IMG/VR virus record: IMGVR_UViG_3300044591_002232
Location: 62,001-126,000 of that record
Length of the DNA: 64,000 nt
Direction: 5' to 3' (one strand)
Shown: piece after piece, positions 10,856 through 46,599 of the stretch
How positions within the stretch are numbered: the stretch's first letter is position 1
How the letters are laid out: each line of letters starts with the position of its first letter
Notes under the pieces: model-generated
Seen by the model: only the letters and a program-made list of their open reading frames with translations
What the model was told of the DNA's origin: nothing
Databases searched by the model: none
Translations under genes and position numbers: made by a program

Positions 10856-12064
10856 ATGTTGGTCCAAAAATCGGTTAAACTTAGAATCTATCCAAATAAC
10901 AAACAAGATGTTATTCTTCTTGAAAAGCATTTTGGTTGCAGGAGATTCGTGTATAATCATTTTCTAGAAATATTTAATGAAAATTACCACCAGGGTAAAA
11001 AGAAGTTGTCCTATGTTGATGCCGCCAAGATTCTTGTTGACCTTAAAAAGTCAGAAGAAGCTCAATGGTTGAAAGAAGTTAATTCGCAATCTCTTCAGGC
11101 AACGCTTAAGGACTTAGATGGGGCTTTTGATAGGTTTGATAGGAAAATAACCGAGTTTCCTAATTATAAGACTAAAAGAAAATCCAGAGCATCATTTAAG
11201 GTCCCTCAGCATTTTGATATTGATTGGGAAAACAATCTTATTACTATCCCTAAATTTAAGACTCCATTTAAGTTTAGTGGAAAGTACAAGGGTGACCTGG
11301 TTAAAATTAATTCTGTTACTATTTCAAAAACTCCTTCTGGAAAGTATTATGCTTCCGTTCAAGGAGAATTTGATATTCAACCAAAACCACAAGTTGAAAA
11401 CTGTATCGGGATTGATTTGGGAATTAAGGATTTGGTCATTACTTCTAATGGCGAAGTTTTTCCAAACAAAAGATTCCTTAAGAGAAAATTAAAAACTCTT
11501 AAGTATATCCAGAGACAACATTCTAAAAAGAAAAGAAATTCAACAACAAGAGAACGATGGAGAAAAAAGTTAGCAATTCATTATGAAAAAGTAACTAATC
11601 AAAGATTAGATTATCTTCACCAAATTACTTCTCAACTCATTAACGAAAACCAAGTTATTTGTATTGAGAATTTGAACGTGAAAGGAATGGTCAAGAACCA
11701 TAAATTAGCCCAGGCCATTAGTGATGTTGCCTGGGGCACACTAGTTAGACTGTTAGAGTATAAATGTCAATGGAACTCAAGAGAACTTGTTGTTATCGAT
11801 AGATTCTATCCTTCAAGTAAAACTTGTAGTTCTTGCAGTCATTTGATGGCGGAAATGCCTCTAAATGTAAGAGAATGGACTTGTCCTTCTTGTGGAACGG
11901 TTCACGATAGAGACATCAATGCTGCCAAAAACATTCTAATTCAAGGATTAAATATTCTGTCTGGTTCAGGAACTGAGTCGGACATTAAACAAAAACAGCA
12001 GGAGGCGTCTTCAATAGAAGAGTCTGTGAATGCTGAAACCGCGATGTCTTCAGCTTCGCGGTAG
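10856..12064 (+). CDS. tnpB: RNA-guided endonuclease TnpB
   Basis: N-terminal HTH (LRIYPN...FGCRRFVYN), RuvC-I GIDLG, RuvC-II IENL, Zn finger CSSC/CPSC, RuvC-III DRDINAA. Confidence 0.95.
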   Translation: MLVQKSVKLRIYPNNKQDVILLEKHFGCRRFVYNHFLEIFNENYHQGKKKLSYVDAAKILVDLKKSEEAQWLKEVNSQSLQATLKDLDGAFDRFDRKITEFPNYKTKRKSRASFKVPQHFDIDWENNLITIPKFKTPFKFSGKYKGDLVKINSVTISKTPSGKYYASVQGEFDIQPKPQVENCIGIDLGIKDLVITSNGEVFPNKRFLKRKLKTLKYIQRQHSKKKRNSTTRERWRKKLAIHYEKVTNQRLDYLHQITSQLINENQVICIENLNVKGMVKNHKLAQAISDVAWGTLVRLLEYKCQWNSRELVVIDRFYPSSKTCSSCSHLMAEMPLNVREWTCPSCGTVHDRDINAAKNILIQGLNILSGSGTESDIKQKQQEASSIEESVNAETAMSSASR

Positions 12065-17769: not shown

Positions 17770-18348
17770 CTACCCTTCCTCCTGTCGAATCTGATGAAGG
17801 ATTTTTTTTAAACCTCTCTGATTCGCGTACATATCCATCAATTCTGTAACCATTTCATCTATAAAGTCAAATTCTTTACCCTGATAGGCTCCTTTTATCA
17901 CTGCTGCCTTATAAAAAAGTTTCAATTCGGCCACTAATTTATCGGATAGGATGGATTCTTTTTCCAGATCATTTATCATTTCCGGTCTGGTGCGTGGCCG
18001 CCCCATCTTATGATCCTTTTTAACGCGGTATTTATCTACGCTTATGATATTTTCCAGTGAATTATCGTAAACATCATCTGATCTGTGAATGAAGTATTTT
18101 CTATGATTACTTTTAGGAATAAAAAGTTTCCCTACCAGTATATGCACGTAAAAGGCTCTTGTTACACCATTCTTTCCACATAGTATAACTTTGTTATAAC
18201 TGGGACCTATTCCACTCTTAAAAAATGCTTTCTTTTTTAGTCCTTTATTTTTCTGTCTGTTGGAATATACATTCCCATGAATATCTACAAAATACCCAGA
18301 GAAATCTTCAAGACCTTCTATTTTAGAGACTTCTTTTAGATTGTTCAT
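17770..18348 (-). CDS. NUMOD4/HNH-type endonuclease-like protein
   Basis: YFVDIHGNVYS...YVHILVGKLFIP...IHRSDDVYDNSLEN; GGA RBS and minus-strand TAAATA upstream (about 18371-18376). Confidence 0.7.
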   Translation of the reverse strand: MNNLKEVSKIEGLEDFSGYFVDIHGNVYSNRQKNKGLKKKAFFKSGIGPSYNKVILCGKNGVTRAFYVHILVGKLFIPKSNHRKYFIHRSDDVYDNSLENIISVDKYRVKKDHKMGRPRTRPEMINDLEKESILSDKLVAELKLFYKAAVIKGAYQGKEFDFIDEMVTELMDMYANQRGLKKILHQIRQEEG

Positions 18349-18439
18349 TGTTATAATTCCTTAACCTAGTTATTTATTTTTATGGCAGTCTAAAATTTGG
18401 GCGAATATACGTCCTTACGGCAATTTTTTAGTATTCGTG

Positions 18440-18660
18440 TATAATATATTTGTACTATTTGTATTATTTCGTAGTATATCTGTATTATTTTGTTTTTATG
18501 TAGTAGTATATCTGTATTATTTTGTTTTTATGTCTATATTATTTTATATTTTATAATTTAGTCTTTTTTATGTAGTAGTATATCTGTATTATTTTATATT
18601 TTATATTTTATATTTTATAATTTATAATTTAGTCTTTTTTATGTAGTAGTATTGGCCTGC
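18440..18660. repeat. AT-rich tandem repeat tract
   Basis: Three copies of TAGTATATCTGTATTATTTT and two of TATAATTTAGTCTTTTTTATGTAGTAGTA. Confidence 0.8.
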
Positions 18661-19409: not shown

Positions 19410-19451
19410 GCAGGATAAGTGTCCAGTTTTATATCATTGCGACCCTTCGCT
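19410..19451 (-). repeat. Element B copy 1 (candidate sRNA core)
   Basis: GCAGGATAAGTGTCCAGTTTTATATCATTGCGACCCTTCGC; minus-strand promoter not evident. Confidence 0.7.
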
Positions 19452-19616
19452 GATTTAATTTTGAGCGGGTGGGTGTCTCCTATCGACTGAGTTTATTCTA
19501 GTTGCTAGTAACGCGGAGAAGGGCATAAGTGTGCCAGTTGTTTAAGTGTCACAAGGCCCTGACCAGTCACGCATTATCTCCCTTATAATAAGCTAGTCAT
19601 TACACCATTATCGTCA

Positions 19617-19826
19617 ATGGAATTTCTTAAATTAACCGATTGGCAAACTCGTGAGCCAGTTTACCTAGATCCAAATAAAATACTCTTTATTCAGCAAATA
19701 GCCGAACATGATGATTATCCTCGACGCACTCGTATAGACATTATTGGCAGTTCCCAGATTTTTCTTGTTTCGGAAGATGCTGACCAGATAGCTCTTGTTA
19801 GTGGTAGGGGGTTTCAGGATATTTAA
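19617..19826 (+). CDS. Hypothetical protein
   Basis: Follows promoter 19533. Confidence 0.7.
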   Translation: MEFLKLTDWQTREPVYLDPNKILFIQQIAEHDDYPRRTRIDIIGSSQIFLVSEDADQIALVSGRGFQDI

Positions 19827-19878
19827 TAAAAACCAATTTCACCACATCTTATAATAAACCAGTCAACACAAAAACACC

Positions 19879-20040
19879 ATGGGACCAATTACTTTTAAGG
19901 ACTTTTGTGTTATTTTTGTTTTTTCGGTTATTTTCGTTTTAATTACATCTGCATTTGATGCGGCTCTTATTAAAATGAATCTATTGCAATCAAATCAAGT
20001 TACGGAGTGTGCCAGTTGTTTAAGTGGCACAAGGTCCTGA
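19879..20040 (+). CDS. Small membrane protein
   Basis: Read manually; runs through the promoter repeat. Confidence 0.45.
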   Translation: MGPITFKDFCVIFVFSVIFVLITSAFDAALIKMNLLQSNQVTECASCLSGTRS

Positions 20041-20091
20041 CCAATCATCCATTCTCTCCCTTTACAATAAAAGGGTCAACACAAAAACACC

Positions 20092-20244
20092 ATGGGACAA
20101 ATTAATTTTTCAACCATTCGTACCATTTTTGTTTGTTTAGTCATGGGAGCTTTTCTGTTTGTTTGTATGTCAACGACGATGTATAGATTTATTCTTATGC
20201 TCGATCTAAACTCACAAAATCCAGTTTGTGTAGGGAGGATCTGA
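20092..20244 (+). CDS. Small membrane protein
   Basis: Read manually, 50 aa; follows promoter 20011. Confidence 0.55.
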   Translation: MGQINFSTIRTIFVCLVMGAFLFVCMSTTMYRFILMLDLNSQNPVCVGRI

Positions 20245-20250
20245 AGTATA

Positions 20251-20280
20251 AAGGAGAGAATAAATCTCTCCCGTTTTTTA
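20251..20280 (+). terminator. Intrinsic terminator
   Basis: GGAGAGA-ATAAA-TCTCTCC plus T tract. Confidence 0.7.
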
Positions 20281-20295
20281 TAATAATATAAAAGT

Positions 20296-20349
20296 GCAGG
20301 AGTAGTTTCTCGTTTTATGTAATCACGCCCCTGCGTTGTTTATAGTATA
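20296..20349 (-). ncRNA. Element B copy 2 (candidate sRNA)
   Basis: Conserved core, hairpin ACGC-AGGG-GCGT, minus-strand TATACT at 20349-20344. Confidence 0.55.
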
Positions 20350-20509
20350 AACTATAAAAACCTGGACCGTGGTTGATGGTGTGCCAGTTGTTTAAGTGGC
20401 ACAAGGTCCTGACCAATCATCCATTCTCTCCCTTTACAATAAAAGGGTCATCACCAACGTAACGTGTGATGAAAACCCACCACTAAAATCTCTACAACTC
20501 CTGTTTCCC

Positions 20510-20710
20510 ATGACTCAAATCACTCTAACCTCTGGTGAAATCCTGGACATTATTTCAGTCTTGTGTGATGAAGAGCAGGCAGTTTATGATAATAGCCCAC
20601 ATCTGTCGGCTTATTATCTGAACATGGTTCAACAATTCGAGGCTGTTTATAATAAACTCCAAGAATTGCCTGGTGAAAAAATAGTTGCAAACCTTATTCT
20701 GGCTGCCTGA
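20510..20710 (+). CDS. Hypothetical protein
   Basis: ATG 20510 after promoter 20383. Confidence 0.65.
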   Translation: MTQITLTSGEILDIISVLCDEEQAVYDNSPHLSAYYLNMVQQFEAVYNKLQELPGEKIVANLILAA

Positions 20711-20713
20711 ATT

Positions 20714-20842
20714 ATGATTATCATTTACCGTGCTAATCAGTGGGAGTTGTTTCGTGCTCCCCAGGATATAAACGAGGCCTGGGAGCTGGCGGTTAAATTA
20801 ACTTTGGAATCTGGCGTTCAGCATTACGTTGGGCGCGTCTAA
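20714..20842 (+). CDS. Small hypothetical protein
   Basis: Read manually, 42 aa, followed by a terminator. Confidence 0.55.
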   Translation: MIIIYRANQWELFRAPQDINEAWELAVKLTLESGVQHYVGRV

Positions 20843-20895
20843 AAATATAAAGGAGAGATTTATTCTCTCTTTTCTTTTTATAATAATAAAAAATT

Positions 20896-20937
20896 GCAGG
20901 AGTAGTTTCTAGTTTTATGTAATAACGCCCTTGCGCT
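20896..20937 (-). repeat. Element B copy 3 (candidate sRNA core)
   Basis: GCAGGAGTAGTTTCTAGTTTTATGTAATAACGCCCTTGCGC; possible minus-strand TATAAT at 20964-20959. Confidence 0.7.
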
Positions 20938-21097
20938 TGTGTGGTTGTCTTAAGACCATTATAACGCCTCTGGCGGGCTCCTGGGGGCCTCTGGTGATCA
21001 TTCCTGCTTATGGGTCCAATCAGATAATCTTATCAGTAAAGGTCTTGACTTATCGGTGGTGGTGGTTTATTCTTTAGAAGTCGCTGGGATTCCTCCC

Positions 21098-21766
21098 ATG
21101 AAAAAGTATTCTCTGGTTATTAAAGAGCATGAAGAATACGGTGGACTAGGTATAGTTGTAGATACTGGTCGTAATTATTTTGAGCCAGGATTGGATGGGC
21201 TAGTTGTTGCCCATGACATTCTAGAACATACTGTAAAGCCACACTCTTGTGGTTATACTGATGAGCTTATGGCGATTGGCGGTTATATTGCCGGGAGAGT
21301 TGCGTGTGGATATAATTCTAGAGGTTATAGATCAGCCTCGATTGATGATGTAAGTAGTGATATTCAGTCTCTACTCACTGCCTCATTAAATGGTGATGAT
21401 TATGATTTTACAAAAATTGATAAGTGTAATTCGTATCTGCAGGATCAGTGGATTATGGATAAACTCAGGAAAAACGTAAGAGAAGGTATAATTGAGGCCC
21501 TGGATGAATGGTCTGATGGTGAATATGGTGAAGAAGAATTGGCCGATTATGATATTGATTCCATCGTTGGATGGATCTGTAAGGGTTATCAGATGTTTAA
21601 GAAAAGATTTTCTAATATGTATTCTTATGATCATTTGTTTACATCTATTCGTAAGGCAGCGGATAATTTCCTTAGTGATGCAATTGAGGGACAAACTGCT
21701 ACTTTATGTGTCGATTTTTCGTCATGTAATGTATACATAAAAGACGAAAACGGCTGGGATTATTAA
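21098..21766 (+). CDS. Hypothetical protein with VAHDILEH motif
   Basis: ATG 21098 after TTGACT(21045)-17-TATTCT(21068). Confidence 0.75.
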   Translation: MKKYSLVIKEHEEYGGLGIVVDTGRNYFEPGLDGLVVAHDILEHTVKPHSCGYTDELMAIGGYIAGRVACGYNSRGYRSASIDDVSSDIQSLLTASLNGDDYDFTKIDKCNSYLQDQWIMDKLRKNVREGIIEALDEWSDGEYGEEELADYDIDSIVGWICKGYQMFKKRFSNMYSYDHLFTSIRKAADNFLSDAIEGQTATLCVDFSSCNVYIKDENGWDY

Positions 21767-21852
21767 ACAATAGACAGTTCAACAACTGGCACAAGGGGAC
21801 TGTTTATGGTCCCCATCTCACCCTATATTAAGCAAGTCAACCGGACACGATC

Positions 21853-22104
21853 ATGCAAACCACCATCCACCACACTGATAACGAAGGGTCCACCCCGGTT
21901 TGGATCACTTGGTTTTCACAATCCGATTGTGATCAACATAATGAAGCCGAAGGATTGCGTGAAACTTCTGGTGATAATTTGTATGAACCAGGTTACTATT
22001 GGGCAGTTTGTTCTCCTGGTTGTATTCCTAATTCTGAGTTTTTTGGCCCATTTGTTACAACTGAAGAGGCCGAAGATAATGCTAATGAGGTATTGAATTA
22101 TTGA
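21853..22104 (+). CDS. Hypothetical acidic protein
   Basis: Follows promoter 21773; PGYYWAVCSPGCIP...GPF motif. Confidence 0.7.
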   Translation: MQTTIHHTDNEGSTPVWITWFSQSDCDQHNEAEGLRETSGDNLYEPGYYWAVCSPGCIPNSEFFGPFVTTEEAEDNANEVLNY

Positions 22105-22114
22105 TAATTCGTAT

Positions 22115-22146
22115 AAAAGAGTTAGTTAATTCTGACTCTTTTTTGT
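22115..22146. terminator. Bidirectional terminator
   Basis: AAAAGAGTTAG-TTAATT-CTGACTCTTTT. Confidence 0.7.
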
Positions 22147-22170
22147 TGTTTTTTATAATAATAAAAAAGT

Positions 22171-22238
22171 GCAGGATAAGTGTCTCGTTTTATGTTATTG
22201 CGGTCCTCCGCTTGTTTTCTTTTGTTGTTTATAGTATA
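22171..22238 (-). ncRNA. Element B copy 4 (candidate sRNA)
   Basis: Identical to copy 5 over 68 nt; minus-strand TATACT at 22238-22233. Confidence 0.6.
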
Positions 22239-22354
22239 ATCCATAAAAACCTTAATCGTGACTGATGGTGTGCCAGTTCCATAAGTGTCACAAGGCCCTG
22301 ACCACCAACCCATTATCTCCCTTATACTAATCCAGTCAACCAGACAATTCTCCA

Positions 22355-22738
22355 ATGGCCACTATCTCTGACAAAATAGCCAAACAACTTGAGGAGATTG
22401 AAAATAGGGCTTATAAGGAAATTGATGCAATTGCAGAACAATACTTTGAATCAACTGTTGTTCCATTCTGTAAAGAGAATGATCTAACTTTTGTGGTAGG
22501 TATGGGTAAGATATTCTTTTGTAATGAGAAATATGATCTGAGTTTCCATGAGTCTGACGAGATTCCAGATGTTAATGAGGATCTTTTAGAGCTAGACGAA
22601 GATGATCTTTATCCTTGTGAAAAATATGCTTTAGAGCACCCATTGGCCAAGGAAAAACTAAGAGAGATTTTCGATGTTCTTAACATTATAGTTTTCAAGT
22701 TTGAGTTTGGTTTTAGTGTTCCTAACTTCCAAGGATAA
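22355..22738 (+). CDS. Hypothetical acidic protein
   Basis: Follows promoter 22272. Confidence 0.75.
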   Translation: MATISDKIAKQLEEIENRAYKEIDAIAEQYFESTVVPFCKENDLTFVVGMGKIFFCNEKYDLSFHESDEIPDVNEDLLELDEDDLYPCEKYALEHPLAKEKLREIFDVLNIIVFKFEFGFSVPNFQG

Positions 22739-22836
22739 TTATTTTAATTGTGCCAGTTGTTTAAGTGGCACAAGGTACGGTGATCGTCTGGTTTTTATGG
22801 GTTACAGTTGACTAGTCAACCAAGGGAACGCCTCTC

Positions 22837-23036
22837 ATGTCTTGCCCCTATCAGAACAACGGTTTTGCTAATCGTGGGGAGTATCTTGATAATTTGCGCG
22901 AAGAATATGGTAGCCTAGTTGATGTTCTGACCAACATCTTGCCCCTAGTGAAGATTTTGACGGGCTAGTTACAGAACTGGAAGACGCTATGGATTCTGGG
23001 GAATATGACGAAAAAGAATTTCTCACCTTGATCTAG
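22837..23036 (+). pseudogene. Frameshifted conserved phage gene
   Basis: MSCPYQNNGFANRGEYLDNLREEY...LP continues as SEDFDGLVTELEDA if one C is added at the C-run 22942-22945. Confidence 0.6.
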
Positions 23037-23070
23037 TTAATTTACCAACTTTCCTTCATTCTTTATAGTT

Positions 23071-23250
23071 ATGTCTGTCACACTTAGCGGTTATTGTATT
23101 CGCATGGCTTTACTTGATCGCCGTAGAGAATTGATCCGGTGCGCGTCTATCACTAAAGATGCTACTTTTGATTCTAAGATTAAAGAATTGGATGACGCAT
23201 TGGTTCAACTTTGGTACGCAAAGGAAATTATACTAACTGAAGTAGTATAA
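23071..23250 (+). CDS. Hypothetical protein
   Basis: Read manually, 59 aa, followed by a terminator. Confidence 0.6.
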   Translation: MSVTLSGYCIRMALLDRRRELIRCASITKDATFDSKIKELDDALVQLWYAKEIILTEVV

Positions 23251-23254
23251 AAAA

Positions 23255-23297
23255 CAGTGACCCGCGAGTTCTTTATACTTACGGGTCACTTTTGTTT
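23255..23297. terminator. Bidirectional terminator
   Basis: GTGACCCG...CGGGTCAC flanked by A and T tracts. Confidence 0.75.
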
Positions 23298-23320
23298 AGT
23301 ATAAAAAATAGTATAAAAAA

Positions 23321-23411
23321 GCAGGATAAGTGTCTCGTTTTATGTTATTGCGGTCCTCCGCTTGTTTTCTTTTGTTGTTTATAGTATAAAACACTTTTCC
23401 AGTATTGTCAA
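23321..23411 (-). ncRNA. Element B copy 5 with consensus minus-strand sigma70 promoter
   Basis: TTGACA(23411-23406)-17-TATACT(23388-23383) firing into the conserved core. Confidence 0.7.
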
Positions 23412-23521
23412 GCATTTTATGATTAGTGTTGCTTATCAATCCCATAAGCACCGCTGATCGTTAAAGGCTTGACCTAGTGGGGCTGATCTGGTATTCTTTA
23501 AAGGTAATCGGGTTTCACCCC

Positions 23522-23965
23522 ATGACTGTTTCATTCGTTGATTTTGCAGCTTTCCAGGATGCTCAGAATAAAATTCAATTGAATGTCAGGAAGTATTGTC
23601 TCCAGTTGATTGATGCCCTGAAGGATAATTATCGGAATTATGCTATTCGCGGACATCAAATTTTCATCGATAGGGAAGAATCAGTTGAGTATCATCAATC
23701 TTGTATTGATAAACTGAAAGAGGGACATTCCGACATTGATTATGAAATTGAGTCGGGTAGTAAGTATCACAAAATCATTATGATTTCTTATGGTGGATCA
23801 CGTTCGGTTCATTGTTTTGTTGATAAAAAGACCGGGGAAGTTTATAAATCAGCAAGCTGGAAATCCCCTGCTAAAGGTATTCGATTTGATCTGCGATTGA
23901 TCAAAGATCGTGAATGGTTGTTTGAAAATGCCGATTGGAGTGGTGGTTATCTTTACAAGAGATGA
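23522..23965 (+). CDS. Conserved cyanophage-type hypothetical protein
   Basis: KYHKII...RSVHCFVDKKTGEVYKSASWKSPAKG; promoter TTGACC(23469)-17-TATTCT(23492). Confidence 0.8.
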   Translation: MTVSFVDFAAFQDAQNKIQLNVRKYCLQLIDALKDNYRNYAIRGHQIFIDREESVEYHQSCIDKLKEGHSDIDYEIESGSKYHKIIMISYGGSRSVHCFVDKKTGEVYKSASWKSPAKGIRFDLRLIKDREWLFENADWSGGYLYKR

Positions 23966-23978
23966 ATCGAATAATTAT

Positions 23979-24003
23979 AAGAATCCTTCGGGATTCTTTT
24001 TTA
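23979..24003. terminator. Intrinsic terminator with UUCG tetraloop
   Basis: AAGAATCC-TTCG-GGATTCTT plus T tract. Confidence 0.85.
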
Positions 24004-24027
24004 TTGTTTATAGTGTATTATTATAGT

Positions 24028-24118
24028 GCAGGATAAGTGTCTCGTTTTATGTTATTGCGGCCTTCCGCTTGTTTTCTTTTGTTGTTTATAGTATAACACC
24101 GATCCATAATACTGTCAA
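24028..24118 (-). ncRNA. Element B copy 6 with consensus minus-strand sigma70 promoter
   Basis: TTGACA(24118-24113)-17-TATACT(24095-24090). Confidence 0.7.
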
Positions 24119-24208
24119 GGTTTTATTGATAAGTGTTCCTGATCGGTCCAGGGCTTGACGGATCGGCCCTGATCTGCAATACTTAAAGGGTCAAAGGCAA
24201 TTCAAGCC

Positions 24209-24499
24209 ATGAACATGACAAAAAAGGGCTACATTTTCACTTCTGAAACTGAAGTCGAAAGGGGAATTAAAGCCTCTTCTCTAGCAGAGGCTACCGGAAA
24301 ACTTCCCGATAGTTTTAAGTGGGATGATTATTATGTCGAAGAACTTTATCACATTGCCAAACTGGGTGATAATGGTAAGTGGGAAATCATCGAATCCTTC
24401 TGGGATTATGATAATGCCGATGCAAAACTTGATTCAGTTTGTGATAAGTATCCGAGTGCTTATGTGGAGATTACCTATAATGGAGTTCCTGTAGGTTAA
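24209..24499 (+). CDS. Hypothetical protein
   Basis: Promoter TTGACG(24155)-17-AATACT(24178). Confidence 0.75.
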   Translation: MNMTKKGYIFTSETEVERGIKASSLAEATGKLPDSFKWDDYYVEELYHIAKLGDNGKWEIIESFWDYDNADAKLDSVCDKYPSAYVEITYNGVPVG

Positions 24500-24512
24500 T
24501 TTACAGTAACTC

Positions 24513-24545
24513 GTGGCCTGGAGTTTCTTATACTCTGGGCCACAA
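24513..24545 (+). terminator. Terminator hairpin
   Basis: GTGGCCTGGAG...CTCTGGGCCAC. Confidence 0.65.
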
Positions 24546-24577
24546 CTTTATTTTGTTTTTTATAATAATAAAAAAGT

Positions 24578-24668
24578 GCAGGAGTAGTTTCCCGTTTTAT
24601 GTTATCACGCTTTTGCGCTCTTTTTATTTTGTTGTTTATAGTATAGCAGCAGTGACCCATAAAGTCAA
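24578..24668 (-). ncRNA. Element B copy 7 with minus-strand sigma70 promoter
   Basis: TTGACT(24668-24663)-17-TATACT(24645-24640). Confidence 0.7.
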
Positions 24669-24778
24669 GGTTTTATTCATAAACATATTTTATCAGCCCC
24701 ATAAGCACGGCTGATCGTTAAAACCCACCACTAGCCTCTAGAGCTGCTACACTATGGGAGCAGTCAAGGGAACAACCC

Positions 24779-25180
24779 ATGATCAAACTCACCGGAACCG
24801 CTCTCCTGGCCCACCGTGAGGCCTGCCGTGCTGCTGGTGTCAGCAATGCTATTATTGTTCGCTCTGCCGGTTATATTGGAACCCGCAAGGATGGCAGCGA
24901 GCGGCTACAATTTACCGAGTATTATGAGAATGTTCTCATTGCCAAAGGTGAAATGTTCCGCATTAAAATAGACGTGGCCGAGATTACCCCAGCCGGACTA
25001 CAGCCCGTGTGGGGATATTCGTTCACTACGACTACTAAAAACCACCAGAGTATTGCCCGTAAAGTGCGGGAACTGACTCAACTTACCAATGTTAAATGCA
25101 ATCGAACTGTCAAAGATGGGGTGATTCGTTTACAGCCCAAGGGAACGAATGAAATGATTGCTTATAGTTTGCCCGCATGA
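24779..25180 (+). CDS. Hypothetical protein
   Basis: ORF track, cassette position. Confidence 0.75.
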   Translation: MIKLTGTALLAHREACRAAGVSNAIIVRSAGYIGTRKDGSERLQFTEYYENVLIAKGEMFRIKIDVAEITPAGLQPVWGYSFTTTTKNHQSIARKVRELTQLTNVKCNRTVKDGVIRLQPKGTNEMIAYSLPA

Positions 25181-25257
25181 GTTAGTAACAATCAGTGGCC
25201 CTGGAGTTCTTTATACTCTAGGGCCTTTATTTGTTCTTTATACTTTATTATTTTATG

Positions 25258-25300
25258 GCAGATTAAGTGTCTTGTTTTATATCATTGCGGCGCCCCCGCT
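25258..25300 (-). repeat. Element B copy 8 (candidate sRNA core)
   Basis: GCAGATTAAGTGTCTTGTTTTATATCATTGCGGCGCCCCCGC. Confidence 0.7.
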
Positions 25301-25476
25301 CTTTTTATTTTGTTGAAATAATACTAGGAAAGATCAGGCCAGGCCGTTGTATCGGCTGATACCAAACGGCCATCAGCGGATCTTATCAGTCGAATCCTGG
25401 AAACGGTAGCGGTTGATACAGAACGGCGAGCCGAAACGTGGGATTATTAAAGGGTCAAACAACCGGAGCCGATCCG

Positions 25477-25884
25477 ATGACAACCGCCACTCTCAACCGT
25501 TACACTCTCAACTGGGAAGCCTACTCTACGTGGCCGCCTGCTGATGATGACATCGGTGGAATCTACACCGATTGTGTACACTTCTACGCTGTTGGTGGAT
25601 ACAAGTTTGAGGTATCATTCCGCATCGGTCAAGGTAGGCAACTGGGCTTGCTTTTCTGTGAGGTTGTTATGGTTTATCCTAACCGGATTGATACCAATAA
25701 GTTGCATTATTGCATGGGGCAGTTTTATAAAAACAGTGGCGCAAAATTGTTTGCCCAATTTGCTCTGAACCACTTTATTGAGACGGAAACATGGAGCGTA
25801 TGCCCATCATTTCAGCCGGTTGATTATATCGATGGCGAGCCATGTACGCTTGGCGGTGATGAGATCGTGAGCGAAATTATCTGA
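25477..25884 (+). CDS. Hypothetical protein
   Basis: ATG 25477 after GGAG. Confidence 0.7.
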   Translation: MTTATLNRYTLNWEAYSTWPPADDDIGGIYTDCVHFYAVGGYKFEVSFRIGQGRQLGLLFCEVVMVYPNRIDTNKLHYCMGQFYKNSGAKLFAQFALNHFIETETWSVCPSFQPVDYIDGEPCTLGGDEIVSEII

Positions 25885-45018: not shown

Positions 45019-46599
45019 ATGTCTGCAATTATAACTGATAATCTAAGAATTCTGAGAGCCAAACAGTTTGTTGAAACTGCCGCAACTACAAACTACTACA
45101 GTTTTATTGGGCTTCCTAATCCTTCTGATTATTATGCTGACTGGAATATTTCCCCATTGGCGCCTAAGGATAGTTTTGAGCAAGAATCCGACTATTGGGA
45201 TACAATGATTGCTCTAAAGAAGATTTTTTCAACTGATGTTCGCCAGGCAGTCAGAAAAATTAGATGGGAAAGTGGAATTACTTATGATATGTATCGTCAT
45301 GATGTAAGTCGAACAAAAACCACTATTCCTTCTGGAGCGACTAGTTTATATTCCTCTAATTATTATGTTGTAAATAGTAACTATCAGGTTTATATTTGTT
45401 TAAACAATGGGATTTCACCAGAAAATCCAGGTGGGAGGCAATCTCAGTTTGAACCAAAATTTACAGATCTAGAACCTAGAGCAGTCGGAACCGGAGTAGA
45501 TGGTTATATTTGGAAGTATCTTTACACTTTAAGTGCAACTGATATTATTCGTTTTGATAGTATAAACTTCATTCCAACCCCACAAAATTGGGGGGAGGAT
45601 GAGCAGTCGTTTTTAATTAAGAATAATGCGGAGAATAGTGGTCAAATCAAAATTTGTACTGTTACAAATAGAGGTGATTACAGTAATGTTTCAGGAATCC
45701 GGAACCGAGTTTTCCGAAATGTTCCAATAAAAGGTGATGGCTCTGGGGGTCTAGTCACAATCACGTTTAACAATAATGCTCAGGTAGAAAATGTCTTCGT
45801 AGCGAATGGTGGACAAAATTATACTTATGGGCGAATTGACATTCAGGCTGGGGGACTCCCAAATCCAACGACTCTACCACAATTTGATGTGATTATTCCA
45901 CCAAAAGGGGGACATGGTTTTGATATTTATAATGAACTAGGAGCATTTTATGTTTCAGTTTATTCTAGAATTGAAAATGATTTTGATAACCCGGATTTTA
46001 TCACTGGAAATGAAATCGCCAGGATTGGTATAGTAGAAAATCCTCTTAGATTTGATTCCTCGGAGGTTCTCACAGATGATAAAGTAAGTGCTCTCAATGC
46101 AATTAAACTTGTTGGAATTACAAATCAGAGTGATTATCAATCAGCAACCTTCATCTCAGATTCCTTTATCACCCAGACGGTTGGTCTAGGTGTCACGGCT
46201 GTTGGAAGAGTGGTATCTTATGATAGAAACACTGGAGTTCTTAAGTATTGGCAAGACAAAACACTAGCCGGATTTACTACAGCAGGAATTCAAACATCAG
46301 CGACATATGGATTTAATCTAGAAAAATTTACTGCAACTCCGGCAACCGGTGGCAGTGTCACAATTTCTGGTGGAAGTATTGATTTAAATATTGATACCTC
46401 TTTCGGTTCTATTGCAAATCCTGGCATAACAACCACCATAAATAATAGGACATATAGATTAGGTCAATCATTCATTAATGGCCTGGCAAATCCAGAGGTC
46501 AAAAAACATTCTGGATCTGTCATTTATGTTGATAATAGACCGGCTATTACAAGATCTCAGAATCAAAAAGAAGACATTAAGGTAATTCTACAGTTTTAA
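45019..46599 (+). CDS. gp8: Baseplate wedge subunit gp8
   Basis: W.SG.TYDMYRHD, VYICL.NG, DGYIWKYLY; late promoter at 44993. Confidence 0.88.
   Translation: MSAIITDNLRILRAKQFVETAATTNYYSFIGLPNPSDYYADWNISPLAPKDSFEQESDYWDTMIALKKIFSTDVRQAVRKIRWESGITYDMYRHDVSRTKTTIPSGATSLYSSNYYVVNSNYQVYICLNNGISPENPGGRQSQFEPKFTDLEPRAVGTGVDGYIWKYLYTLSATDIIRFDSINFIPTPQNWGEDEQSFLIKNNAENSGQIKICTVTNRGDYSNVSGIRNRVFRNVPIKGDGSGGLVTITFNNNAQVENVFVANGGQNYTYGRIDIQAGGLPNPTTLPQFDVIIPPKGGHGFDIYNELGAFYVSVYSRIENDFDNPDFITGNEIARIGIVENPLRFDSSEVLTDDKVSALNAIKLVGITNQSDYQSATFISDSFITQTVGLGVTAVGRVVSYDRNTGVLKYWQDKTLAGFTTAGIQTSATYGFNLEKFTATPATGGSVTISGGSIDLNIDTSFGSIANPGITTTINNRTYRLGQSFINGLANPEVKKHSGSVIYVDNRPAITRSQNQKEDIKVILQF

What the first reader, a model, noticed from the sequence alone, without database searches (positions are those of the whole stretch)
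20995..25388. Second operator family (box II) in tandem pairs with 22-bp phasing
Seen: a 19-bp imperfect palindrome at 21017 (CAATCAG-ATAAT-CTTATCA), 23442 (CCATAAG-CACCG-CTGATCG), 24127 (TGATAAG-TGTTC-CTGATCG), 24699 (CCATAAG-CACGG-CTGATCG) and 25370 (CCATCAG-CGGAT-CTTATCA). Three have a partner exactly 22 bp upstream (20995, 23420, 24677). These cassettes lack box I; three have near-canonical -35 boxes 8-9 bp downstream. In three units box II lies between back-to-back promoters. Inference: a separate regulon with cooperative binding of a second regulator on one helix face, controlling both the cassette genes and element-B RNAs.
Basis: partly seen in the sequence, partly recalled or inferred. 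Interest (0 to 1): 0.6.

Follow-up and report, generated by a model that had tools for sequence, protein, structure and literature searches.

The report
Paired operator at cyanophage early promoters
A short palindromic DNA motif, often in pairs exactly 22 bases apart, sits just upstream of early-gene promoters in this freshwater cyanophage and in unrelated cyanophages; its layout matches the binding site of a LysR-type regulator that the phage does not encode, so these phages may use a host regulator to control their first genes.

Summary
All five 19-bp palindromes and the three partners 22 bp upstream are at the stated coordinates. The core ATMAG-N5-CTKAT occurs 7 times in the window against 0.55 expected.

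The window belongs to a 250-kb T4-like cyanomyovirus. Its closest isolates are Synechococcus phages B3 and B23.

The refined motif is ATMAGC-N3-GCTKAT. It recurs in relatives and in B23, and all 16 adjacent pairs are exactly 22 bp apart. The core lies 10-11 nt upstream of the -35 box of the gene promoter. In three units it lies equally close to a strong divergent minus-strand promoter.

The strict pair occurs in 106 IMG/VR stretches against 11 for a reversed control. Carriers include T7-like cyanopodoviruses, where it precedes the first early promoter.

The layout (15-bp dyad, 7-bp gap, 15-bp dyad, T-N11-A) equals the canonical OxyR/LysR tetramer site. The same sequence pair lies 4 nt before an OxyR-like LysR gene in six bacterial metagenome contigs. 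The phage encodes no LysR or XRE helix-turn-helix domain.

Best reading: this is an operator for a host LysR-type regulator that acts on both divergent promoters. Binding and its effect are inferred, not shown. A phage-encoded binder remains a rival.

The parts
20995..21013 (.). Box II, distal weak copy (core ATCATTCCTGCTTAT at 20997-21011) of the 20896 unit
   Evidence: It matches 7 of 8 key half-site positions and lies exactly 22 bp from the proximal copy. It ranks 11th genome-wide with a matrix not trained on it.
21017..21035 (.). Box II, proximal copy (core ATCAGATAATCTTAT at 21019-21033)
21045..21073 (+). Sigma-70-type promoter TTGACT-17-TATTCT of the cassette gene 21098-21766
   Evidence: The -35 box starts 9 nt after the 19-mer.
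23383..23411 (-). Divergent promoter TTGACA-17-TATACT reading into element B
   Evidence: 11 of 12 matches. Its -35 box lies 10 nt from the distal core.
23420..23438 (.). Box II, distal copy (core ATTAGTGTTGCTTAT at 23422-23436)
   Evidence: It is conserved in L009, L014 and L015.
23442..23460 (.). Box II, proximal copy (core ATAAGCACCGCTGAT at 23444-23458)
23469..23497 (+). Promoter TTGACC-17-TATTCT of gene 23522-23965 (DUF7717)
24090..24118 (-). Divergent promoter TTGACA-17-TATACT reading into element B
   Evidence: 11 of 12 matches.
24127..24145 (.). Box II, single copy (core ATAAGTGTTCCTGAT at 24129-24143), 10 nt and 11 nt from the two -35 boxes
24155..24183 (+). Promoter TTGACG-17-AATACT of gene 24209-24499
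24640..24668 (-). Divergent promoter TTGACT-17-TATACT reading into element B
   Evidence: 10 of 12 matches.
24677..24695 (.). Box II, distal weak copy (core ATAAACATATTTTAT at 24679-24693)
   Evidence: It matches 6 of 8 key positions here. The orthologous site in relatives reads ATAAGTGTATTTTAT, 7 of 8.
24699..24717 (.). Box II, proximal copy (core ATAAGCACGGCTGAT at 24701-24715), upstream of gene 24779-25180
25349..25362 (-). NtcA-type box GTATCGGCTGATAC (GTA-N8-TAC), 22 nt upstream of the minus-strand -10 box TAGTAT (25326-25321)
   Evidence: This is one of only two such 14-mers in the genome (0.46 expected). The spacing is read directly from the sequence.
25370..25388 (.). Box II, single copy (core ATCAGCGGATCTTAT at 25372-25386) between two NtcA-type boxes
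25406..25419 (+). Second NtcA-type box GTAGCGGTTGATAC, upstream of the -10-like GATTAT of gene 25477-25884
20896..20920 (.). Element B core preceding the box II pair. The other four cores in box II units are at 23321-23345, 24028-24052, 24578-24602 and 25258-25282.
   Evidence: There are eight copies in the whole genome, all between 19410 and 25282.

Best explanation
Box II is a protein-binding operator. Its core is a 15-bp interrupted palindrome, ATMAGC-N3-GCTKAT, with position 3 variable. It occurs singly or as two dyads separated by 7 bp, which gives the 22-bp phasing.

It lies in the regulatory spacer of repeated early-gene cassettes of a freshwater T4-like cyanophage. Each cassette reads: gene, terminator hairpin, element B, operator, sigma-70-type promoter, conserved AGTCAAC leader. 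The operator abuts the promoter without overlapping it. The core ends 10-11 nt before the -35 box, which puts its centre near -53. A second dyad is centred near -75. In three units the same spacing holds towards a strong divergent promoter that reads into element B.

The layout is that of a LysR-type (LTTR) tetramer site: a dimer of dimers on two T-N11-A dyads, two helical turns apart, on one face of the DNA, next to the -35 box and between divergent promoters.

The phage encodes no LysR-type protein, and unrelated cyanophage lineages carry the same module at promoters that host RNA polymerase must use first. The binder is therefore most likely a host LTTR. RbcR/CbbR is the nearest published half-site match. 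Such a regulator would tie the firing of these early cassettes and of the divergent element-B transcripts to the host's metabolic state.

Shown here: the motif, its enrichment, its conservation, its fixed geometry and its occurrence across lineages. Inferred: that a protein binds, which protein it is, and whether it activates or represses.
For: 1. Enrichment and position. The core occurs 7 times against 0.55 expected in the window and 8 against 1 in the genome. The clustered sites are intergenic.
2. Conservation. There are 48 distinct box II contexts downstream of element B in 9 related IMG/VR contigs and in B23. The half-sites are near-invariant and the spacers vary. B23 (MN695335) has 7 cores against 1 control, including two perfect pairs 22 bp apart in the syntenic small-ORF array.
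3. Phasing. All 16 adjacent pairs are exactly 22 bp apart.
4. Geometry. Among 67 unique strict pairs in IMG/VR, TTGAC lies exactly 10 nt (22 cases) or 11 nt (5 cases) outward of the core. The reversed control shows none. In the T4-like clade the promoter-proximal centres fall at -52 to -54 (17 units), -75 (5) and -86 (3). These are steps of 22 and 11 bp. Three units lie at -58 or -59.
5. Spread across lineages. The strict pair occurs in 106 stretches, against 11 for the reversed control, 38 at 21-bp phasing and 26 at 23-bp phasing. Carriers include T7-like cyanopodoviruses, identified by RNA polymerase, primase-helicase, terminase and ThyX, with polymerase 46% identical to S-CBP2, Syn5 and P60. 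In these the pair precedes the first early promoter. The unselected flank positions show the same biases in both sets.
6. No shared phage regulator. The genes shared between this phage and the other loci are HNH, RlpA-like and helicase genes. The MarR-like first gene of one T7-like group is absent from this genome, from the 23-bp class and from cultured phages.
7. LTTR layout. The canonical OxyR site is ATAG-N7-CTAT-N7-ATAG-N7-CTAT (PMC5720770), the same 4-7-4-7-4-7-4 frame. Six GC-rich bacterial metagenome contigs carry ATAAG-N5-CTTAT-N7-ATAAG-N5-CTTAT; it ends 4 nt before the start codon of a 301-aa LysR regulator in the four contigs where that start is intact. That regulator's best NCBIfam match is OxyR.
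8. Half-site match. The Synechocystis RbcR consensus is ATTA(G/A)-N5-(C/T)TAAT (review PMC13249358).
9. The phage lacks LysR HTH_1, XRE HTH_3 above cut-off, and MotA.
10. Neighbouring host-factor sites. NtcA-type boxes flank box II at 25349 and 25406. Use of NtcA sites by cyanophages is published (PMC3037559).
Against: - No host genome could be scanned, so the motif has not been seen in a picocyanobacterial regulon.
- No expression or binding data exist. Only DNA metagenomes hold this phage.
- About 80% of the phage's ORFs have no family assignment. Two of the three Pfam batch lists were truncated, so an unrecognised phage DNA-binding protein cannot be excluded.
- One T7-like lineage encodes a MarR-like winged-helix protein directly downstream of the pair. 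It could be that lineage's binder.
- Position 3 of the half-site is T, as in RbcR, in only about 10% of half-sites.
- Three units place the site out of phase, at -58 or -59.
- ATAAG/CTTAT palindromes at 21-bp spacing also serve other, unrelated AT-rich viral contigs in classical repressor positions. Half-site similarity alone is therefore weak evidence.
- The marine cyanopodoviruses Syn5, P60 and S-CBP2 have no core match.
Confidence: 0.5

Rival explanations
1. Box II is the operator of a phage-encoded regulator that no family model recognises. An early or middle protein would bind the pairs cooperatively and shut off, or autoregulate, both divergent early promoters.
For: - Most ORFs of the phage have no family assignment.
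- One freshwater T7-like group has a MarR-like winged-helix gene as the first gene after the pair.
- The box II-controlled 133-aa protein at 24779-25180 is conserved across the clade. It folds confidently (pLDDT 92.6) with an N-terminal helix-helix-hairpin-helix domain that weakly resembles AraC-type helix-turn-helix domains, Z about 4.
- Phage repressors commonly use tandem palindromes about two helical turns apart.
Against: - No protein is shared between this phage and the T7-like carriers apart from HNH, RlpA-like and helicase proteins.
- The MarR-like protein is absent here, from the 23-bp T7-like class and from cultured phages. It is unrelated to the 133-aa protein.
- The fold searches gave no significant DNA-binding match.
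- The sites sit upstream of the -35 box rather than over the -35, the -10 or the start site.
- In T7-like phages the sites sit at promoters that must fire before any phage protein exists.
Confidence: 0.27
2. Box II binds a host factor that is not an LTTR, for example a Fur-, MarR-, GntR- or CRP-family dimer. Two dimers would occupy the pair independently.
For: - The evidence from other phage lineages argues for a host factor but does not name its family.
- Half-sites such as GATAAG resemble parts of Fur- or SlyA-type boxes. This comparison is from memory.
- In other carriers, motifs resembling RpaB (HLR1) and LexA sites lie next to the pairs. This shows that these regions collect sites for diverse host factors.
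Against: - The 15-bp dyad, 7-bp gap, 15-bp dyad frame with T-N11-A, and the position abutting the -35 box between divergent promoters, match the LTTR layout exactly.
- The spacings of Fur (7-1-7), CRP (5-6-5) and NtcA (GTA-N8-TAC) sites do not fit.
Confidence: 0.15
3. Box II has no binding function. It recurs only because whole intergenic cassettes were duplicated and shuffled by recombination, as in PeSL modules. The palindromes would be passengers, or recombination or structural elements.
For: - Units 23321, 24028 and 24578 are about 70% identical over 178 nt.
- The same promoter modules are joined to different genes in relatives, as expected for PeSL-type shuffling (PMC2839356, PMC4122927).
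Against: - The half-sites stay invariant while the spacers and flanks diverge, even in units that otherwise cannot be aligned.
- The 22-bp phasing and the 10-nt distance to the -35 box are kept in phage lineages that share no other DNA.
- The same pair precedes a bacterial LysR gene.
Confidence: 0.05

Closest known systems
OxyR-type LysR (LTTR) tetramer operators: ATAG-N7-CTAT-N7-ATAG-N7-CTAT, as in the oxyR-oxyS divergent region of E. coli
   Same: - Two 15-bp T-N11-A dyads are separated by 7 bp, giving 22-bp phasing on one face of the DNA.
- The site lies upstream of and abutting the -35 box.
- It sits between divergent promoters, one of which drives a short non-coding transcript. The oxyS parallel is from general knowledge.
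- An OxyR-like LysR gene in bacterial metagenome contigs carries literally ATAAG-N5-CTTAT twice at its own start.
   Different: - The half-site letters differ: ATMAG(C) against ATAG.
- No LTTR gene lies next to the sites or anywhere in the phage.
- The sites occur in a lytic phage, repeated in several cassettes.
- Binding has not been tested.
RbcR (CbbR/Ycf30) sites of cyanobacteria, consensus ATTA(G/A)-N5-(C/T)TAAT (Bolay et al. 2022, via review PMC13249358)
   Same: - Both have a 5-5-5 architecture.
- Four of five half-site positions agree (A, T, -, A, G).
- Variants with T at position 3 (ATTAG, CTAAT) occur among box II sites.
- RbcR belongs to the small set of regulators listed for Prochlorococcus MED4.
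   Different: - Position 3 is mostly A or C here; T makes up about 10%.
- RbcR sites are reported near -90 (activating) or -10 (repressing), not near -53 and -75.
- Nothing is known of the RbcR motif in Synechococcus-Cyanobium hosts.
PeSL (promoter-early stem-loop) cassettes of T4-type phages (Arbiol 2010, PMC2839356; Comeau 2014, PMC4122927)
   Same: - A repeated terminator stem-loop plus a sigma-70-type early promoter flanks small variable ORFs in a hyperplastic region of a T4-like genome.
- The modules are joined to different genes in relatives.
   Different: - The spacer here is much longer, about 250-300 bp.
- It carries an extra conserved element (element B), a divergent promoter and one of at least two operator families.
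- Dense PeSL arrays were reported as not seen in the cyanophage S-PM2 (PMC4503421).
NtcA and Pho boxes in cyanophage promoters (Sullivan et al. 2010, PMC3037559)
   Same: A cyanophage promoter carries the recognition site of a host metabolic regulator. NtcA-type boxes flank box II in the 25258 unit.
   Different: - The motif, the presumed regulator family and the tandem layout all differ.
- Box II sits upstream of the promoter core and does not replace the -35 box.
Lambdoid CI/Cro operators (OR1-OR3)
   Same: Tandem 15-19-bp palindromes lie about two helical turns apart between divergent promoters. Cooperative binding is plausible.
   Different: - Box II does not overlap the -35 or -10 boxes.
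- No CI/Cro-type gene is present.
- The phage is a lytic T4-like virus.

Membership tests
LysR-type (LTTR) operator | Interrupted dyad with T-N11-A | tested here: met
   In ATMAG-N5-CTKAT, T at position 2 and A at position 14 are separated by 11 nt. These positions are 99-100% conserved in 94 half-sites.
LysR-type (LTTR) operator | Two dyads about two helical turns apart (recognition and activation sites, OxyR frame 4-7-4-7-4-7-4) next to the -35 box | tested here: met
   All 16 pairs are 22 bp apart. The core lies 10-11 nt from TTGAC. The frame is identical to the published OxyR consensus.
LysR-type (LTTR) operator | A cognate LTTR gene, usually divergent from the target | tested here: not met
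   PF00126 finds nothing in the 249,820-bp genome at E <= 1. The divergent partner is element B, not a regulator gene. A host-encoded LTTR would be required.
LysR-type (LTTR) operator | An LTTR protein binds the site | not testable with these tools
   This needs EMSA, footprinting or a pull-down. Indirect support: the same sequence pair lies directly before an OxyR-like LysR gene in six bacterial contigs.
RbcR regulon site | Match to ATTA(G/A)-N5-(C/T)TAAT | tested here: inconclusive
   The architecture and four of five half-site positions match. Position 3 is T in about 10% of half-sites.
RbcR regulon site | The motif is present upstream of RubisCO and carbon-concentrating genes in the host | not tested
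   No host genome was reachable.
PeSL cassette | Stem-loop terminator followed by a sigma-70-type early promoter, repeated between small ORFs of a T4-like hyperplastic region | tested here: met
   Terminator-like hairpins and promoters were found. Eight repeated units lie between 19.4 and 25.3 kb. T4-like structural genes lie downstream.
PeSL cassette | Modules mediate gene shuffling between close relatives | tested here: inconclusive
   Homologous genes carry different upstream modules in relatives and in B23. No recombination junction was analysed.
Lambdoid CI/Cro operator | Operators overlap the -35 and -10 boxes of the divergent promoters, and a CI/Cro helix-turn-helix gene lies adjacent | tested here: not met
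   The sites lie 10-11 nt outside both -35 boxes. No HTH_3 match exceeds the cut-off.
T4 MotA middle promoter (Mot box TGCTT) | MotA activator gene present, with the box centred near -30 | tested here: not met
   PF09158 is absent. Box II is centred near -53.
NtcA-activated promoter (for the boxes flanking box II at 25349 and 25406) | GTA-N8-TAC placed about 22 nt upstream of a TAN3T -10 box | tested here: met
   On the minus strand, GTATCAGCCGATAC-N22-TAGTAT. The plus-strand copy has GATTAT in place of TAN3T. Relatives show the same arrangement.

The most novel reading that the evidence does not exclude
Unrelated cyanophage lineages, T4-like myoviruses and T7-like podoviruses of freshwater and estuarine picocyanobacteria, have each placed the tetramer site of one host LysR-type regulator next to their earliest host-polymerase promoters. 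The likeliest candidate is the carbon-status regulator RbcR/CbbR. In the T4-like clade this site is combined with NtcA boxes. The start of infection, and a family of divergent short transcripts, would then be gated by the host's carbon and nitrogen state.
Probability: 0.25. Interest if true: 0.8.

Novelty: new variant of a known kind. Interest (0 to 1): 0.65.

Why it matters
How cyanophages time and tune their earliest transcription is poorly understood. They lack the MotA and AsiA factors of T4, and only NtcA and Pho boxes are known as host inputs.

A conserved operator shared across lineages, with a fixed position relative to the -35 box, gives a concrete and testable handle on this question. 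It names a DNA probe. It names cultured systems: B3/B23 with their Synechococcus-Cyanobium hosts, and S-CBP1 with Synechococcus CB0101. It also names a short list of candidate proteins.

If a host LysR-type regulator binds, infection success would be coupled to the host's carbon or redox physiology. That matters for models of phage-driven mortality of picocyanobacteria. The cassette design could also be reused as a regulated divergent promoter part for cyanobacteria.

Tried and rejected
- DNA similarity searches of the region and of one intergenic unit against cultured phages found nothing useful.
- Pfam and PHROGs on the cassette proteins gave only DUF7717, phrog_818 and phrog_7111. No DNA-binding family appeared.
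- The minus-strand gene 17770-18348 next to the array has no family match.
- Pfam scans of 301 small ORFs of the genome, in three batches, listed no classical repressor. Two of the lists were truncated at 25 families.
- Direct searches of the genome for HTH_3, LysR HTH_1, MotA C-terminal domain and hli were negative or below cut-off.
- The 133-aa box II-controlled protein (24779-25180) was folded with pLDDT 92.6. Foldseek against the PDB and the wide VIA search gave no convincing match, best Z 4.9. The ESM Atlas gave only weak leads, DUF8033 and Kyano_Gp96. It remains an untested candidate, not evidence.
As a result, host genomes could not be scanned for the motif.
- The genome search 'relatives' is not available for a virus record.
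- Rfam found nothing credible in 18.3-26.7 kb.
- RNAalifold on element B found only a 4-bp hairpin with modest covariation. An element-B small RNA is therefore plausible from its promoters but unproven.
- No RNA sequencing run holds the region.
- The generic NtcA promoter pattern is not enriched genome-wide: 12 matches against 19 expected. Only the two strict boxes beside box II stand out.
- The papers of Doron et al. 2016 and Bolay et al. 2022 are not in the library.
- IHF, Fur, CRP and MotA-box readings were considered and rejected on spacing or on absence of the factor.
- The large protein searches (search for homologous proteins, the search of protein representatives) and complex prediction were not used. 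No claim here rests on them.

Full report
**What the window is.** The window is bases 62001-126000 of a 249,820-bp IMG/VR virus record with direct terminal repeats and 37% G+C. Baseplate gp6 and gp8, neck and gp15 families mark it as a T4-like myovirus. Its gp15 is 74% identical to that of Synechococcus phages B3 and B23. Those are freshwater cyanomyoviruses isolated on members of the Synechococcus-Cyanobium complex (PMC7171214). The region is present in at least 24 lake-water DNA metagenomes. No RNA run holds it.

**The setting.** Between about 19.0 and 26.2 kb lies a plus-strand array of small ORFs, almost all without family assignment. The array is built from repeated units. Each unit reads: gene or genes, terminator hairpin, a conserved 'element B', an operator, a sigma-70-type promoter, a conserved AGTCAAC leader, and the start codon. 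Element B has eight copies in the whole genome, all in this array.
- Three units carry box I, with the core CAGTT-N4-AAcTG.
- Five units carry box II.
- The design is an elaborated form of the promoter-early stem-loop (PeSL) cassettes of T4-type phages (PMC2839356; PMC4122927).

**Checking the observation.**
- The core ATMAG-N5-CTKAT has 7 matches in the window against 0.55 expected. No shuffle out of 100 reaches 7.
- The whole genome has 8 matches, against 1 for the reversed control.
- Five matches are the clustered intergenic sites. Two lie inside long ORFs and look like chance. One, at genome position 235841, is intergenic but overlaps a -35 position.
- The partners at 23420 and 20995 rank 10th and 11th genome-wide with a matrix trained without them. 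The partner at 24677 is degenerate here but better preserved in relatives.
- The -35 boxes 8-9 nt downstream and the three back-to-back promoters are confirmed. The minus-strand TTGACA/T-17-TATACT sites are the best promoter-like matches in the region.
- Three of the units are paralogues about 70% identical. Independent evidence therefore had to come from elsewhere.

**Conservation in relatives.** An exact-pattern scan for the element B core found nine related viral contigs.
- In these, box II recurs 100-125 nt downstream of element B, in front of many different genes.
- There are 48 distinct contexts. They sharpen the motif to ATMAGC-N3-GCTKAT, with near-invariant A, T, A and G in each half-site and free spacers.
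- All 16 adjacent pairs are exactly 22 bp apart.
- The cultured phage B23 has 7 cores against 1 control. Two of these are perfect pairs 22 bp apart, in the syntenic array upstream of its baseplate genes.

**Geometry.**
- In paired units the order is: minus-strand -35 box, 10 nt, dyad, 7 nt, dyad, 10 nt, plus-strand -35 box.
- The single site at 24127 lies 10 and 11 nt from the two -35 boxes.
- If the start site is placed at the conserved GTC leader, the promoter-proximal dyad centres fall at -52 to -54 in 17 unique units, at -75 in 5 and at -86 in 3. These are steps of 22 and 11 bp. Three units lie at -58 or -59.
- In the 25258 unit, box II lies between the only two strict GTA-N8-TAC boxes of the genome, 25349-25362 and 25406-25419, where 0.46 would be expected by chance. 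The left box lies 22 nt upstream of a minus-strand TAGTAT, which is the canonical architecture of an NtcA-activated promoter.
- In relatives the minus-strand -10 box (TAnnnT) is kept, while its upstream partner is either TTGACA or an NtcA-type box. This supports a real divergent promoter.
- Use of NtcA sites by cyanophages is published (PMC3037559).

**Beyond this clade.** I scanned the IMG/VR viral contigs for the strict pair and for three control patterns.

| Pattern | Stretches in IMG/VR |
|---|---|
| Strict pair, 22-bp phasing | 106 |
| Reversed (non-complement) control | 11 |
| Pair at 21-bp phasing | 38 |
| Pair at 23-bp phasing | 26 |

- Among 67 unique 22-bp pairs, TTGAC lies exactly 10 nt (22 cases) or 11 nt (5 cases) outward of the core. 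In the 23-bp class it lies at 11 nt in 12 cases. The reversed control shows none.
- Carriers include further T4-like contigs and several T7-like lineages.
- One T7-like group has T7-type RNA polymerase, primase-helicase, terminase and ThyX. Its polymerase is closest to the cyanopodoviruses S-CBP2, Syn5 and P60, at 46% identity. In this group the pair sits directly upstream of the first of the early promoters at the genome's left end.
- Positions that were not part of the search pattern show the same biases in the T4-like clade and in the other contigs. The base before the half-site is G or C, the one before that is not G, and the first spacer base is C or T. This argues for one binding specificity.
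- Among cultured podoviruses, only S-CBP1 (host Synechococcus CB0101) has a core. It is a perfect ATAAGCAACGCTGAT near its left end. Syn5, P60 and S-CBP2 have none.
- The 21-bp class is mostly a different, AT-rich set of about 15-kb contigs. Their palindromes lie between the -10 box and the start codon. The half-site alone is therefore not diagnostic.

**Who binds?**
- The phage has no LysR HTH_1 domain, no XRE HTH_3 above cut-off and no MotA. The listed Pfam families of 301 small ORFs include RegA, gp33 and an LSM domain but no repressor. Two of those lists were truncated.
- The genes shared between this phage and the other carriers are HNH endonucleases, an RlpA-like protein and a helicase, none of them near the sites.
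- One freshwater T7-like group encodes a weakly MarR-like winged-helix protein as its first early gene. That protein is absent from this genome, from the 23-bp T7-like class and from cultured phages. It is unrelated to the 133-aa box II-controlled protein of this phage.
- That 133-aa protein folds confidently but matches no DNA-binding fold convincingly.
- In short, unrelated phages share the operator, with the same phasing and the same distance to the -35 box, at promoters that host polymerase must use first. They share no candidate regulator. This favours a host protein.

**Which kind of protein?**
- The dyad is T-N11-A, and two 15-bp dyads are separated by 7 bp. This is exactly the frame of the canonical OxyR site, ATAG-N7-CTAT-N7-ATAG-N7-CTAT (PMC5720770).
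It returned six GC-rich bacterial contigs carrying ATAAG-N5-CTTAT-N7-ATAAG-N5-CTTAT. In the four contigs where the start is intact, the pair ends 4 nt before the start codon of a 301-aa protein.
- That protein has LysR HTH_1 and substrate-binding domains. Its best NCBIfam match is OxyR, at 254 bits, below the equivalog cut-off of 329. This sequence pair is therefore used in nature at the promoter of an LTTR gene.
- Among cyanobacterial LTTRs, the published RbcR consensus ATTA(G/A)-N5-(C/T)TAAT shares the architecture and four of five half-site positions (PMC13249358).
- For Prochlorococcus MED4, a preprint lists a very small set of regulators that includes RbcR (10.64898/2026.04.15.718746).
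- I therefore read box II as an LTTR-tetramer-type operator that most likely recruits a host LTTR. The placement abutting the -35 box and the in-phase positions suggest contact with RNA polymerase, and so activation or a two-state switch, rather than simple occlusion. That step is inference.

**Limits.**
- There are no transcript or binding data.
- Whether the site activates or represses is unknown.
- Element B has no Rfam match and only a 4-bp conserved hairpin. 'Element-B RNA' rests on promoter geometry alone.

Noticed in passing
window 25349-25362 and 25406-25419: The only two strict GTA(T/G)C-N4-G(A/C)TAC 14-mers of the genome (NtcA consensus GTA-N8-TAC) flank box II. The left one lies 22 nt upstream of a minus-strand TAGTAT -10 box. 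In relatives the same box replaces the -35 TTGACA of the divergent promoter.
   Followed up: partly
window 19410-25282 (eight copies: 19410, 20296, 20896, 22171, 23321, 24028, 24578, 25258): Element B has a 25-nt core, GCAGGAKWAGTKTCnnGTTTTATRT, followed by a small GC hairpin with compensatory changes and a T-run. It is confined to this array. It has no Rfam match, and only a 4-bp hairpin is conserved. It may be a divergent short transcript or a DNA-level site; this is unresolved.
   Followed up: partly
window 19528-19549, 20006-20027, 20378-20399, 21775-21796, 22267-22288, 22747-22768: Box I (GTGCCAGTTGTTTAAGTGGCAC, core CAGTT-N4-AAcTG) occupies a similar upstream position, centred near -56. 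Its promoters have poor -35 boxes. B23 has the variant CCAGTTTTCTAACTGTCC.
   Followed up: partly
window 10856-12064, plus two more copies elsewhere in the genome: TnpB / IS605 OrfB (Cas12f-like TNB, RuvC and helix-turn-helix domains) is encoded in the phage. Three copies were detected genome-wide.
   Followed up: no
window 18430-18660: An AT-rich tract of degenerate tandem repeats (units such as TTTTATGTAGTAGTATATCTGTATTATTT) lies between the lone minus-strand gene 17770-18348 and the plus-strand cassette array. B23 has an equivalent tract. It could be an origin or a promoter cluster.
   Followed up: no
window 22837-23026: The 43-aa ORF 22837-22968 appears to continue in another frame, reading ...DFDGLVTELEDAMDSGEYDEKEFLTLI. 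Relatives have an MSNPYIANGFANR... homologue. This may be a frameshift or a broken gene.
   Followed up: no
genome 235841-235855 (outside the window): A sixth intergenic core, ATAAGTTTTTCTGAT, ends 10 nt before a TATTAT -10 box with an AGTCC leader. It therefore overlaps the -35 position. A box I half-site (AACTGTCCAC) lies just upstream.
   Followed up: partly
L071 and L243 (about 246-330); L050, L269 and L090: In another group of viral contigs the box II pair is followed by GTTGCAAAATGTTACAAAAGC and then TTGACT. This is an HLR1-like direct repeat, the RpaB site type, recalled from memory. The pair is preceded by AGTAC-N4-GTACT palindromes that resemble cyanobacterial LexA boxes.
   Followed up: no
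L105 6244-6513 and 12 other loci: A freshwater T7-like cyanopodovirus group encodes a 90-97-aa MarR-like winged-helix protein (MarR_2, E = 0.0012) as the first gene after the operator pair. It has no homologue in cultured phages.
   Followed up: yes
KC310802.1 (S-CBP1) 46213-46227 = L152 914-928: The cultured cyanopodovirus S-CBP1 (host Synechococcus CB0101) has one perfect ATAAGCAACGCTGAT about 43 nt upstream of a TTGACA near its left end. The downstream sequence matches uncultured contigs that carry 23-bp pairs.
   Followed up: partly
genome-wide: The phage encodes an LSM-domain protein and a homologue of T7 gp5.9 (a RecBCD inhibitor), together with RegA and gp33.
   Followed up: no
L166-L197 (21-bp class, about 15-kb contigs of 33% G+C): A different viral family uses ATAAG-N5-CTTAT pairs at 21-bp phasing, placed between the -10 box and the start codon of divergent genes. 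This is a classical repressor position.
   Followed up: no
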